Of a stretch of DNA of 64,000 bases, positions 21,101 to 24,100 are shown piece after piece (the first letter of the stretch is position 1; every line of letters begins with the position of its first letter). Source of the DNA: Eutreptiella sp. 'Long Island Sound 2002' (taxonomy: Eukaryota > Protista > Euglenida); contig OZ038378.1 of NCBI GenBank assembly GCA_964036045.1, forward strand, positions 199,702,001 to 199,766,000, given 5' to 3'. A program made the position numbers and the translations under genes. Under the pieces are notes generated by a model. That model worked only from the letters and a program-made list of their open reading frames with translations. It had not been told where the DNA came from and made no database searches.

Positions 21101-24100
21101 GGAACGCTTCCTGCGCGCGGTAATTAGCTTTAGTGTACATTGTCCAAGAAAATGACCCCATGGACCATACGGCTTGCACTTTGGTGGCGGTGGGACCATT
21201 ATGGAAAGAGTGCCGAAGATTCCGGTTCATGGCTTGTATGTGAGCGATCATTGATGTTTTTGTGATGTCAAGGCCTGGTGGAGGGGTACTTGGTTTTGTT
21301 GGGAGTGCAGTAGGAGAGTTTACCCATTTTGGAGATGTGACTCTAGATTAGGGAGTGCAGTTTGTCCTGGGTGAGTGAGTTGTAAATGAGTCTGTAAGTA
21401 CAGTTGTATATTGGAAAGCTTGATGATTTCGTTGTGGCTGAGGGGAAGGGTGGCAAGGTTAGTGAAGAAGAAATTGATAGTGTTGGTGAGGAGAATGAGC
21501 ATTTGGGAGTTTTGCTGTTGATTGTAAAAATAAATGCACAGGTATTTATTGAAGACTTGTGGTCCTCTGTCTTCACCAAAGGTACTAAAGTGAATTGTGG
21601 GTGTTGCCAGAACAGTAAGGTGTGGTGCGCTGTTGAGGGCGTGGAGTTCCGATTTTGTGGCATTGAAACAGAGACCGCAACAAGGTCCATGAATGAAAAG
21701 GAAGTGAACAACTTTGGAAAAGCGTTTGGCGGGACGTCGTTCGCAGCGCTATGTCATCAATGAAAGAGAAGAGGTTGGTTAATTCCCGTGTTGGTAGAAG
21801 GGGCTTAATGTGGAGAATGATGGGGTCGATAAAGAGGTTAAAAAGAATGGGAGAAATAGGGCATCCTTGACGCAGGCCACGAATGCAGTGGGCAGCGAAG
21901 AGGGCAAAACCATTAATGATGGGGTAGTCGAAAGGGGCGGCACACAAGTTCTGAATTAAGTGGACGATGTGAGTGGGGAAATTGTTGTATACGCCAAAGT
22001 GCACTGGAGGGGACAGAGTTGAAAGCTTTATTGAGGTTGACGTAGAGGCGGTAGACGTCAAGGTGAAGAGAGAGGTTGGCGATCATAGAGTAAATGTGGT
22101 CTGTGGTTCTGTGGTTACGCAGTCCACCATATTGAGTGGTGTTAGTTAGCTTGTATGTTGTGGTGTAGCAGGTGAGCGTGGTGGCGCCATAGGAGGCTAG
22201 AATTTTGCACAAAGTGTTGAGAAGGCCGATAGGTCTATAGTTTGTGGGCTCGTGGGGGTCATCTTTTTTATATAAAAGAAAATTCTATTGCCTTCGGCAG
22301 TGCACCTCGAAGAGAGGCTGACAGTCAGCCAATCAGTCAGTTAGTCAGGCAAGCAGTGAGTCAGACAGTCAGTCGGGCAAGCAGGCAAGCAGGCAAGCAG
22401 ACAGAAACACCCAGTTTGCGTGTTTTCAGTGGCAGAGTCGGCTGCAGCAGCTGTCAAAACAAGCAATGGTCGAATGGTAATGCAGCCGACCCCGAAGATA
22501 TAGGTCGGCAGTTCGATTCCCGGTCGGTTGAATGCGAGCGGCGCCGGCCGACTTGCCAGCTCTGCCCAATCTTACCCTTGTTCAAATCCTTCCGAGGACA
22601 AACTTCTGAGCACAAACTTTTGACCCCCCCCCCCTACCCCCCCCCAAAAGTGATAGCCGGTTTCAAGGGATAGAGGCCTCAGAATCAAAAAATCCATTCG
22701 GGGATTGTCTTATTGAGTAAAATAATGATTTTACAAGGGGTTGCACATCAAATATCATGCCTTGGGGTATGCTACGCGAATGACCCCCCCAAAAGGGAGG
22801 TATACTACGCCCGCGCCTGCGCGTGATCTAACAACCTCTCTTTGAGGTGATTTTTTGGTTCAATTCAAGGGGATGCGTGAAGTGATAAGACGAGTGCATA
22901 GGTTGTAGATGAAGGTTTGAAGGCTGTCATGATAGAGAAGAGATAGAGTGAGGTTTCATCGAAACCAGGCGCTGTGTATGGTTTGGCGTGAGAAAGGAGG
23001 TGATTAAAGAATTGTCTTGTAAATTGGGGCAGGGGTACATCGTCGGGGAGTTTGGGGGATGAAGACATCATAAAGTTGTTGTCTATGTTAAAAGTAGGGA
23101 GGCCACCCAGGGAGATTAGAGATTCCCCCATGGATTGGCACATGGCAGCAGGGTCGGAGGTGGGGTTGCCTTGAGTATTGTAGAGGGACATGGGTGTGGT
23201 GGCGCGTGGGCAGAGTGTATGGTTGATTGTTTTGTTGATGTGTTTGTTTTGTATGAGTGGGTAGCGTAGTGTTTTGTGTGACTGCGTTTCGTTTTTGTTG
23301 CACCGGTCGTGCAGTAGGTTTTGGAGAAAATTGAGTGTTTGTTTGTTGAGGCCTTTTGTTGTTGTGCATGTGCATTGAAGTGTTTTTCGACGCTGGTAGG
23401 TTTGTGAGTGTGTGCTTGGTGGGTAACCCGTTTGTAGGTGGTGACCAGTTGAGTGAAGATAAAGTCAGTGACAGGAATAAGGTCGTCCATGGTGTGTTGA
23501 TGCCGGAGTGAGTTGTGGTGGGTGACACAGTCTTCGAATGGTTGAAGAAGTGAAGTGAGGTGGACTTTTTCGTATTTGTTAAGTGGAAGGGGGTGAATTA
23601 TGGACTGTGGTATGTCATATATCTTGATTGGGTTAATGGGGATGGCAATGGAAGTGGAGACCGGGCGGTGGTCAGTGACAGTATTGGTTGCGTCGATGTG
23701 GGTGTTGAAGGATTTAAACGTGGCATTGAAGGAAGGTGAGGCAAGAATGAGGTCTGTACGCGTTTGTGAAGGTAGTCTTGTGTTGGCTGGTCTCGTCCCT
23801 TATTTACTGTGAGGGTGATCCTTACCAAAAAGGTCAACCAGTGTGGGTGTAGTGGAGGGCCCTGAAGGGTGGATTTGTTCGTGAAGCAAGGGCCATGTTG
23901 TTTTTTGTTTTACGTTTTCGGTTTCATTTTCCAAAAGGGGTTGAAGGTAAGTGGTGAAGTCGGCAAAGAAAATGTGAAGAGGTTGATCGTGTTGCAGTTT
24001 GGAGAGGGTTTTCTCTAGTCTTGGCCGAAGGCGGGTGAGGTAAGTTTTGTATATGTCGATAACACAAATTGTGTTGTAACCCGGAATTGTAATGTCCACA

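What the first reader, a model, noticed from the sequence alone, without database searches (positions are those of the whole stretch)
22283..22850. Helitron/Helentron-like element carrying a tRNA-spaced Pol III cassette with a covarying stem and a hypervariable 13-nt loop (4 copies)
Seen: copies at 22283, 52322, 59160 and 59979 each contain an A-box-like motif, a 6-nt arm, exactly 13 nt, a 6-nt arm and a B-box-like motif, on the strand opposite the element's TC-to-hairpin polarity. The arms pair in copies 1 and 4 (GCCGAC/GTCGGC) and in copy 3 (GCTGGC/GTCAGC). Copy 3 shows a C-G to T-A double change and an A-T to G-T wobble. The loops are largely divergent (cccgaagatatag, cggcgtcttttgg, cgccaacatacag; catcatttggcct in copy 2, whose stem is partial), while the element termini are well conserved. 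In copy 4 the 5' arm GCCGACCG could instead pair with CGGTCGGC just after the B-box, a possible two-state fold. Known: the A/B-box spacing equals tRNA spacing; copy 2 resembles eukaryotic tRNA-Gly as I recall it. Inference: a rolling-circle DNA transposon may spread a structured, Pol III-transcribed small RNA with a variable loop, an unusual Helitron/SINE hybrid.
Basis: partly seen in the sequence, partly recalled or inferred. Interest (0 to 1): 0.8.

Follow-up and report, generated by a model that had tools for sequence, protein, structure and literature searches.

The report
Rolling-circle-type repeat carrying tRNA-like promoter pair
The four copies belong to a very abundant, non-coding jumping element of a euglenid alga that looks like a Helitron-type passenger element and carries tRNA-derived promoter-like boxes, usually as a convergent pair. 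The proposed structured RNA with a co-varying stem and hypervariable loop is not supported.

Summary
The four copies are real: 22280-22853, 52319-52852, 59157-59773 and 59976-60525. Ten more full copies were fetched from the same assembly.

Read on the minus strand, the element has the layout of non-autonomous Helitron-like-2 elements (HINE/DINE-1 type):
- 15-18-nt inverted repeats;
- a small hairpin after the right repeat;
- no target duplication in 13 copies;
- a microsatellite core;
- head-to-tail joints.

Summed word depth at its ends is about 40,000 times that of the unique flanks.

The "cassette" has real A-box-like and B-box-like motifs 42-43 nt apart. ARAGORN finds no tRNA in any unit. 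Rfam's tRNA model gave no match in the eight units tested at E up to 10. Nine of 14 copies carry two convergent units in a roughly 230-bp foldback, so the single units in the window are a derived form.

Over 23 units:
- The loop is 43% identical, about as variable as the flanks (47-51%). It is not hypervariable.
- The stem is 87% paired, mostly through conservation, with only two clean double changes.
- The 5' arm pairs about as well with two other copies of the same motif.
- Twelve units carry a T4-T6 run inside the loop.
- The boxes are better conserved than the neighbouring spacers, so TFIIIC or Pol III binding remains plausible but untested.

The parts
22280..22853 (-). Copy 1 of the element. 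It is written on the + strand; the Helitron-like polarity is on the minus strand. One tRNA-like unit.
   Evidence: Alignment A1. Ends fixed by where contigs of other copies stop matching.
22280..22302 (-). Hairpin end: 23 nt outside the inverted repeat, holding the small palindrome TGCCTTCGGCA at 22289-22299. This is the 3' end in minus-strand polarity.
   Evidence: Sequence. Identical or nearly so in 14 copies.
22303..22317 (.). Subterminal inverted repeat CACCTCGAAGAGAGG. It extends to 18 nt in most copies.
   Evidence: Reverse complement of 22835-22849.
22330..22400 (.). Microsatellite-like core of CAGT/CAGG/CAAG units. Its length varies between copies.
22467..22477 (+). A-box-like motif of copy 1, TGGTCGAATGG. 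One mismatch to TRGCNNANNGG.
22485..22509 (+).
22510..22527 (+). B-box-like motif AGTTCGATTCC (one mismatch), followed by a third copy of GGTCGG.
22603..22834 (.). Conserved core of about 230 nt, 85-99% identical between copies, with small palindromes such as GCGCCTGCGC next to the inverted repeat.
22835..22853 (.). Second inverted repeat CCTCTCTTTGAGGTG plus the terminal ATTT. This is the 5' end in minus-strand polarity.
52319..52852 (-). Copy 2, the most diverged. One decayed unit at 52478-52559, with its stem paired at 4/7.
59157..59773 (-). Copy 3, the foldback form with two convergent units.
59288..59517 (.). Imperfect palindrome (foldback) inside copy 3. The outer stem is AAGCAGTGGGGA / TCCCCACTGCTT.
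   Evidence: Self-match on the opposite strand. The same layout occurs in 8 further copies.
59314..59395 (+). Forward tRNA-like unit of copy 3. It has a T4 run inside the loop.
59411..59491 (-). Its loop is 12 nt and holds a T4 run.
59976..60525 (-). Copy 4. One unit at 60163-60244.
51638..51669 (+). Solitary fragment resembling the hairpin end (6 mismatches in 32 nt).

Best explanation
**What it is.** The four copies are members of a very abundant, non-coding element of 0.55-0.62 kb in a euglenid genome. Its ends match non-autonomous Helitron-like-2 elements (Helentron/Helitron2 passengers, the HINE/DINE-1 type).

**How it moves (inferred).** It is most likely moved in trans by a rolling-circle Rep-helicase that recognises the 15-18-nt inverted repeats and the small hairpin after the right-hand repeat. 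It inserts without a target duplication in an A-run/T-run context.

**The interior module (shown).** The interior carries a module derived from a tRNA or a tRNA-derived SINE. In most copies it is a convergent pair of units forming a roughly 230-bp foldback. The single units in copies 1, 2 and 4 belong to forms that lack the second unit. What is left of the tRNA is the A box and the B box at tRNA-like spacing, plus a short motif (GGTCGG three times, CCGACC once). There is no cloverleaf.

**The stem and loop (shown).** These are simply the stretch between the boxes. The loop drifts as freely as the other spacers of the element. The arms are kept mainly because they are conserved sequence, not because pairing is maintained.

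**What the boxes do (inferred, not shown).** The boxes are kept better than their surroundings. The most likely reason is that TFIIIC and perhaps Pol III bind them in propagating copies. In the main subfamily any Pol III transcript should stop at the T4-T6 run between the boxes, giving at most a short RNA of about 40 nt and not a displayed loop.
For: **Family and ends.**
- 14 full copies align end to end.
- Contigs of other copies stop matching at 22279/80 and 22853/4. Summed word depth at the ends is about 35,000-40,000 times that of the unique flanks in two runs.
- Inverted repeats of 15-18 nt: one lies 4 nt from one end, the other is followed by 23 nt that hold a hairpin.
- No target duplication in 13 copies.
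- Microsatellite core.
- Precise head-to-tail joints 22854>22280.
- A sister family has the same hairpin end and roughly 200-bp tandem repeats.
- These features match the published definitions of HINEs (PMC4067079) and of HLE2 (PMC11417382).

**Units.**
- 23 units; 9 of 14 copies hold a convergent pair.
- The A-to-B distance is 42-43 nt in all units. 7 units have a perfect A box and 10 a perfect B box.
- Mean pairwise identity: A-box region 0.83, 3' arm 0.87, B box 0.77, 5' arm 0.63, loop 0.43, flanks 0.47-0.51.
- Within one element, forward versus reverse unit: core 80% against loop 44% (p = 3e-11). Loop against flanks is not different (p = 0.31).

**Folds and models.**
- The foldback as single-stranded DNA has z = -5.8.
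- No tRNA by ARAGORN in any unit. No Rfam tRNA match at E up to 10 in the eight units tested.
- Stem covariation is marginal, and there are only two clean double changes.
- Alternative pairings are equally good.
- RNAalifold does not recover the stem.
- 12 of 23 units have a T4-T6 run between the boxes.
Against: - No autonomous partner with the same ends was found or searched for, and no empty site was available. Rolling-circle mobilisation and the exact target are therefore inferred from anatomy.
- The ends sit in an A-run on one side and a T-run on the other, not the T-T context usually described for HLE2. The rule fits only if the flanking AAAT is read as a target preference.
- Only 14 copies were sampled, out of a family whose ends have word depth tens of thousands of times that of unique flanks. 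Ten of them were found through pseudo-ORFs similar to copy 4, so the sample is not random.
- The stem is intact (no more than one position unpaired or gapped) in 17 of 23 units. The loop length varies by only 1 nt, while other spacers vary by several. Some constraint on this hairpin or on box spacing is therefore not excluded.
- TFIIIC or Pol III binding is not shown by any data here.
Confidence: 0.55

Rival explanations
1. The tRNA-like module is a captured tRNA or SINE fragment with no function at all. It decays neutrally. The better conservation of the boxes reflects uneven mutation (slippage-prone or palindrome-associated spacers) and shared ancestry, not selection.
For: - No tRNA fold.
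- In the window's own copies the boxes carry 1-2 mismatches each. Copy 3's forward unit, with a perfect A box, still has a T at the critical C of the B box.
- Some units are clearly decayed: copy 2, the reverse unit of L009, and the B box of the forward unit of L015.
- The most variable segments include repeats prone to slippage: the microsatellite, the poly-C tract and the GCC repeats at the centre of the foldback.
- In the reverse unit of L011 the loop is self-complementary and lengthens the hairpin. This is the kind of change that template switching makes in palindromes.
Against: - Forward and reverse units keep their own diagnostic differences across elements. They have therefore been separate since the family's founder. 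Even so, their A-box regions are 82% identical while the loops (44%) and flanks (36-40%) are near saturation.
- The box spacing is constant at 42-43 nt in all 23 units.
- Word depth is 5-10 times higher over the A-box bins than over the neighbouring interior bins.
Confidence: 0.27
2. The element spreads a structured small RNA transcribed by Pol III from the A and B boxes. A selected stem presents a 13-nt variable loop, for example as a guide or targeting sequence.
For: - A and B boxes lie at tRNA-like spacing.
- 87% of stem cells are paired. There are two wobble-to-Watson-Crick completions in otherwise intact stems, in the forward units of copy 3 and of L009.
- The loop length is nearly constant while its sequence differs between subfamilies.
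Against: - 12 of 23 units have a T4-T6 run inside the loop, which should end Pol III transcription there.
- The 5' arm (0.63) is much less conserved than the 3' arm (0.87), and 20 of 156 stem cells are unpaired.
- Three of the five double-change cells lie in decayed units.
- The same 5' arm pairs at 80% and 77% with two other motif copies.
- RNAalifold does not predict the stem.
- Single-unit folds differ, and their z-scores are 0 to -2.5.
- The loop is no more variable than the flanks.
- Units occur on both strands in most copies.
- RNA-library contigs over the cassette are 245-285 nt long and run beyond it. They are not small RNAs.
Confidence: 0.06
3. The element is a cut-and-paste MITE with inverted repeats, not a rolling-circle passenger.
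For: - It has 15-18-nt inverted repeats near both ends and is small, non-coding and abundant.
- The published account of DINE-1 says such elements were long misfiled as MITEs, which shows how alike the two look (PMC4067079).
- All copies have AAT before one end and ATT after the other. This could hide a very short duplication such as AT.
Against: - One inverted repeat lies 23 nt inside the end, behind a hairpin. This is not how cut-and-paste ends look.
- No duplication of 2-10 bp is seen beyond the shared A/T letters in 13 copies.
- Precise head-to-tail joints occur.
- A sister family carries satellite-like central repeats, as HINEs do.
Confidence: 0.1

Closest known systems
HINEs / DINE-1 (Helentron-associated interspersed elements; non-autonomous Helitron-like-2 elements)
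   Same: - Non-coding and very abundant.
- 12-18-nt inverted repeats: one a few nt from the 5' end, the other about 38 nt from the 3' end, followed by a short palindrome about 9 nt from the end.
- A short inverted repeat just inside the 5' repeat.
- A conserved core and a microsatellite or tandem-repeat centre.
- No target duplication.
- Clusters and tandem copies.
(Definitions from PMC4067079 and PMC11417382; features seen.)
   Different: - The host is a euglenid alga.
- The ends lie in an A-run/T-run context, not between runs of T.
- The interior holds a convergent pair of tRNA-derived A/B-box units in a foldback. I found no report of this for HINEs: there is no mention of tRNA in PMC4067079, and a literature search gave nothing relevant.
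- No autonomous partner has been linked yet.
tRNA-derived SINEs
   Same: Internal type-2 Pol III promoter motifs (A and B boxes) at tRNA-like spacing, in a sequence that no longer folds as a tRNA.
   Different: - The units sit about 190 nt inside the repeat, not at its 5' head, and occur in both orientations.
- There is no A-rich or simple-repeat tail and no target duplication.
- A T-run lies between the boxes in half of the units.
- The carrier has DNA-transposon ends.
Genuine tRNA genes
   Same: A-box and B-box consensus and their spacing. D-loop-like GGTAA and T-loop-like TTCGAA.
   Different: - No acceptor, D, anticodon or T stems.
- ARAGORN calls none of the 23 units. The Rfam tRNA model matches none of the eight units tested, even at E up to 10 in searches of 230-1,400 nt.
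Foldback (long inverted-repeat) modules in transposons
   Same: A long imperfect palindrome inside a mobile element, strongly stable as a single strand (z = -5.8).
   Different: Here the arms of the palindrome are tRNA-derived promoter units, and the palindrome is internal cargo, not the element's ends.

Membership tests
Non-autonomous Helitron-like-2 element (HINE/DINE-1 type) | Short (about 12-18 nt) inverted repeats near both ends | tested here: met
   CACCTCGAAGAGAGG(TTG) and its reverse complement are present in 14 copies.
Non-autonomous Helitron-like-2 element (HINE/DINE-1 type) | A stem-loop after the right-hand repeat, close to the 3' end. The left repeat lies 2-4 nt from the 5' end. 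| tested here: met
   On the minus strand the left repeat starts 4 nt from the end. The right repeat is followed by 23 nt that hold TGCCGAAGGCA, 9 nt from the end.
Non-autonomous Helitron-like-2 element (HINE/DINE-1 type) | No target-site duplication | tested here: met
   The flanks of 13 copies share nothing beyond A/T letters. No empty site was available to confirm this.
Non-autonomous Helitron-like-2 element (HINE/DINE-1 type) | Insertion between T and T, in T-rich sequence | tested here: inconclusive
   The ends read AAAT...ATTT, with A-rich sequence on one side and T-rich on the other. This fits T^T only if AAAT is a target preference.
Non-autonomous Helitron-like-2 element (HINE/DINE-1 type) | Non-coding, with a microsatellite or tandem-repeat centre | tested here: met
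   Only short pseudo-ORFs, none conserved in frame between copies. Microsatellite core. Sister family with roughly 200-bp tandem repeats.
Non-autonomous Helitron-like-2 element (HINE/DINE-1 type) | An autonomous Rep-helicase element with the same ends in the same genome | not tested
   Earlier unchecked notes report Helitron2/Helentron-type elements in this genome. Their ends were not available to compare.
tRNA gene | A cloverleaf recognised by tRNA finders or the covariance model | tested here: not met
   ARAGORN finds 0 in the window and in 12 loci. No Rfam tRNA match at E up to 10 in the regions searched, which cover 8 of the 23 units.
tRNA-derived SINE | A and B boxes at the 5' head of the repeat unit | tested here: not met
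   The boxes are present. However, they lie about 190 nt inside the repeat and occur on both strands.
tRNA-derived SINE | A 3' A-rich or simple-repeat tail, with target duplications made by a LINE | tested here: not met
   The ends are inverted repeats plus a hairpin, with no duplication.
Structured non-coding RNA with a selected stem | Significant covariation that keeps one defined helix | tested here: inconclusive
   - 4 pairs have double changes, and 4-7 of 500 shuffles reach the observed values. That is inside the range the tool reports for unstructured related sequences.
- Only 2 double changes are clean.
- Two rival helices pair as well and show no covariation.
- RNAalifold does not recover the stem.
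Pol III type-2 transcription unit | A and B boxes, followed by a T-run terminator downstream of the B box | tested here: inconclusive
   The boxes lie 42-43 nt apart. The first T4-T6 run lies between the boxes in 12 of 23 units and directly after the B box in only 2. No transcript data are available.
Cut-and-paste MITE | Inverted repeats at the very ends, flanked by a target duplication | tested here: not met
   One repeat lies 23 nt inside the end, and no duplication is seen.

The most novel reading that the evidence does not exclude
The convergent pair of tRNA-type promoter units is a working part of the rolling-circle life cycle. In the single-stranded transposition intermediate the two units fold onto each other and rebuild a double-stranded A/B-box promoter. 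Host TFIIIC and Pol III bind it and make a short RNA that ends at the T-run between the boxes. That RNA primes synthesis of the complementary strand. This would be an eukaryotic counterpart of the single-strand origins of rolling-circle plasmids and filamentous phages. A milder version is that the pair is a selected TFIIIC-binding module that keeps the element's chromatin accessible.
Probability: 0.05. Interest if true: 0.85.

Novelty: new variant of a known kind. Interest (0 to 1): 0.4.

Why it matters
This gives a concrete description of what may be one of the most abundant repeats of a large euglenid genome, and places it with the Helitron-like-2 passenger elements known mainly from animals.

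The conserved, usually paired, tRNA-type promoter boxes inside a DNA transposon are unusual. If they bind TFIIIC or Pol III, the genome would carry tens of thousands of extra Pol III-type sites. That would bear on chromatin organisation and on how rolling-circle elements use host factors.

The report also removes a tempting but unsupported idea: a transposon-borne RNA with a programmable loop.

Tried and rejected
- **Public metagenome contigs.** I scanned them with two invariant 19-20-mers of the element. The first found nothing. The second gave three chance matches with no similarity beyond the word.
- **Pfam.** Scans of the long ORFs of the window gave nothing.
- **Walking the genome.** I used proteins of the window and pseudo-ORFs of the element. 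This worked but gave only one place per protein, so only 10 further full copies were obtained. The flanks of those loci held no further full copy.
- **Empty sites.** A search among 275 kb found none.
- **Findings search by sequence.** It was blank.
- **Loop inversion.** I considered that the loop differences come from inversion of the loop between the arms. By eye, the reverse complements of the copy 3 and L011 loops are not convincingly closer to the other loops, so I dropped the idea.
- **Concerted evolution.** I considered that conservation of the boxes reflects gene conversion between the two units of a foldback. I rejected it because forward and reverse units keep their own diagnostic bases across elements.
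- **Loop complementarity.** Complementarity of the loops to mRNAs or other elements was not tested. 11-13 nt is too short to give a meaningful result in the sequence at hand.
- **Source tRNA.** Its isotype could not be determined. No genuine tRNA gene lies in the 275 kb sampled, and I did not type tRNA sequences from memory.
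Full report
**1. The observation**

The region 22280-22853 and three further places (52319-52852, 59157-59773, 59976-60525) are copies of one repeat. 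They align end to end (A1; blastn).

- The first ~60 nt and the last ~240 nt are 80-99% identical.
- The interior is much more diverged and has many length differences.
- Each copy has, on the + strand, an A-box-like motif, a 6-nt arm, 13 nt, the complementary arm and a B-box-like motif.

**2. How common it is, and where it ends**

I laid the contigs of three genomic runs and one estuary metatranscriptome on copy 1.

- Contigs of other copies stop matching at 22279/22280 and at 22853/22854. This fixes the ends as AAAT...ATTT.
- Summed word depth over the two ends is about 35,000-40,000 times that of the unique flanks in the two large runs. Over the tRNA-like part it is only 50-600 times. The tool warns that this is not a copy number, so I take it only as "very abundant, with a heterogeneous interior".
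- Many contigs share only the first 37 nt and then diverge. Other families therefore use the same end.
- Several contigs join position 22854 directly to 22280, a precise head-to-tail junction.

Earlier notes of this scan call the genome a euglenid alga and report Helitron2/Helentron-type elements in it. I did not check these notes.

**3. More copies**

Two scans of public metagenome contigs gave nothing usable. The element contains short pseudo-ORFs that a gene caller had called in the source assembly. Searching with two of them and looking up eleven of the hits gave 211 kb of the same assembly with ten more full copies.

Four of these were found through the conserved end region and so are unbiased with respect to the cassette. 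All four carry the tRNA-like part.

In total, 9 of 14 copies carry two convergent units in a foldback. Its outer stem is AAGCAGTGGGGA / TCCCCACTGCTT. Copies 1, 2 and 4 of the window and two others have one unit.

**4. What kind of element it is**

On the minus strand the element reads as follows:

- four letters;
- a 15-18-nt repeat;
- a small palindrome;
- a 230-nt conserved core;
- a poly-G tract;
- the foldback;
- a microsatellite;
- the inverted copy of the repeat;
- 23 nt holding an 11-nt hairpin that ends 9 nt from the terminus.

None of 13 copies shows a target duplication.

This is the published anatomy of HINEs, including DINE-1. That anatomy is: repeats of 12-15 nt lying 2-4 nt from the 5' end and 38-60 nt from the 3' end, a palindrome 8-35 nt from the 3' end, microsatellites or tandem repeats, and no target modification (PMC4067079). 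It is also the anatomy of Helitron-like-2 elements in general (PMC11417382). Tandem copies are explained there by a bypassed termination signal.

A sister family in locus L010 has the same hairpin end and a centre of roughly 200-bp tandem repeats, as in other HINEs.

Two tests remain open:

- The usual T-T target fits only if the flanking AAAT is a target preference.
- No autonomous partner was examined.

A cut-and-paste MITE is unlikely. One repeat lies 23 nt inside the end, and there is no duplication.

**5. Is the cassette a tRNA?**

No.

- ARAGORN finds no tRNA in the window or in the twelve loci.
- The Rfam tRNA model gives no match even at E up to 10 in searches of 230-1,400 nt. Those searches covered all four window copies and two foldbacks.
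- Only generic hairpin models matched, far below their thresholds.

What is tRNA-like is the promoter. The A box fits TRGCNNANNGG perfectly in 7 units and with 1-3 mismatches in the rest. The B box fits GGTTCGANNCC perfectly in 10. The distance is 42-43 nt in all 23 units. The window's own copies carry 1-2 mismatches per box, except that copy 3's forward unit has a perfect A box. A model built from the 23 units finds no further unit in 275 kb. It finds only a weak, different tRNA-like repeat in L013.

**6. The stem**

Over 23 units, 87% of the cells of the 7-pair helix are paired, against 84% after shuffling. The pairing is therefore mostly conservation.

- Four pairs show a change on both sides, in five cells. 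Four to seven of 500 shuffles reach the observed values. The tool states that related sequences without any structure reach this in 5-25% of cases.
- Three of the five cells lie in clearly decayed units: copy 2 at 4/7 paired and the reverse unit of L009 at 3/7.
- The clean cases are the forward unit of copy 3 and the forward unit of L009. Each completes a wobble that is also seen in other units.
- Both changes in copy 3 are transitions at CpG.
- Against these two stand about 20 unpaired cells.
- The 5' arm is much less conserved (0.63) than the 3' arm (0.87), which adjoins the B box.
- The 5' arm pairs about as well with the start of the A-box region (80%) and with the motif after the B box (77%). 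Neither alternative shows covariation. The unit holds GGTCGG three times and CCGACC once.
- RNAalifold does not recover the helix.
- Single units fold in different ways, with z-scores between 0 and -2.5.

The one strongly stable structure is the whole foldback (z = -5.8 as DNA).

**7. The loop**

Mean pairwise identity is 0.43 in the loop, 0.47-0.51 in the 10-12 nt on either side of the unit, and 0.77-0.87 in the A-box region, the 3' arm and the B box.

Between the forward and reverse units of one element, the core is 80% identical and the loop 44% (p = 3e-11). The loop does not differ from the flanks (38%, p = 0.31).

In the nine foldback copies, the loops score 0.60-0.62, like the spacers next to the outer stem (0.52-0.63). 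Within a subfamily the loop is fairly well kept (0.80-0.85).

The signal is therefore not a hypervariable loop. It is islands of conservation, namely the boxes, in an interior that otherwise drifts. Forward and reverse units keep their own diagnostic bases across elements. The conservation is thus not homogenisation between the two units.

**8. Would Pol III make the proposed RNA?**

In 12 of 23 units, all of the main foldback subfamily, a run of four to six T lies inside the loop, about 30 nt after the start of the A box. Only two units have a T-run just after the B box. By general knowledge of Pol III termination, transcription from these units should stop between the boxes, giving at most about 40 nt.

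RNA-library contigs that cover the cassette are 245-285 nt long and run beyond it. They show longer transcripts or DNA carry-over, not small RNAs. Standard libraries would miss small RNAs in any case, so transcription remains untested.

**9. Reading**

The best explanation is a HINE-like passenger of a Helitron-like-2 element that has carried a convergent pair of tRNA-derived promoter units since the founder of the family.

- The stem and loop are the stretch between the boxes, without evidence of selection for an RNA fold.
- The boxes are kept better than their surroundings and their spacing is constant. I read this as probable selection among propagating copies for TFIIIC or Pol III binding. 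This is inference.
- The main rival is neutral cargo with uneven mutation.
- The structured-RNA model is unlikely.
- A speculative reading that the data do not exclude is that the foldback rebuilds a double-stranded promoter in the single-stranded intermediate and primes second-strand synthesis.

**10. Novelty**

The element class is known. I found no report of tRNA-type promoter pairs in HINEs or Helitron-like elements. Seventeen unchecked first-reader notes of this scan mention convergent tRNA-like pairs elsewhere in this genome, some next to LINEs. The module is therefore widespread in this genome and may not be confined to this family.

Noticed in passing
L010 3085-9800 and 6281-6317, 6821-6857: A sister family on the minus strand shares the hairpin end (TTGCCGAAGGCAATAGAATTT). 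Its interior is made of roughly 200-bp tandem repeats, like the satellite-carrying HINEs described in oyster and mite.
   Followed up: partly
L013 6280-6640: A different tRNA-like repeat, with an A-box-like GGTCCAGTGGTAA, a T4 run at the same relative place and a B-box-like GGGTTCACACCC. It lies in a roughly 187-bp tandem duplication and scores 18.6 bits with the model built from the element's units.
   Followed up: partly
L006 8960-9930: An insertion of about 970 bp of unrelated sequence sits inside the poly-C tract of one copy of the element.
   Followed up: no
L010 9900-10210: Two truncated copies of the plain end of the element lie directly one after the other.
   Followed up: no
window 51638-51669: A solitary fragment resembling the hairpin end lies about 650 nt before copy 2, next to a long (CA)n tract at 52120-52268.
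   Followed up: no
window 20706-21178: An array of about eleven 43-bp tandem repeats lies 1.1 kb before copy 1.
   Followed up: no
window 18849-19578 and 32047-33137: Several blocks of a dispersed repeat (86-95% identical), with internal repeats of about 161 bp.
   Followed up: no
window 22180-22960 (runs X8, X9, X12-X15): Estuary metagenomes and metatranscriptomes hold parts of this element family, so the alga or close relatives live in estuaries. The RNA-library contigs follow the same depth profile as the DNA.
   Followed up: partly
L008 4497-4603, 4954-5123, 6282-6390: Fragments of a related family, 73-77% identical to the conserved core. One of them ends in the same inverted repeat.
   Followed up: no
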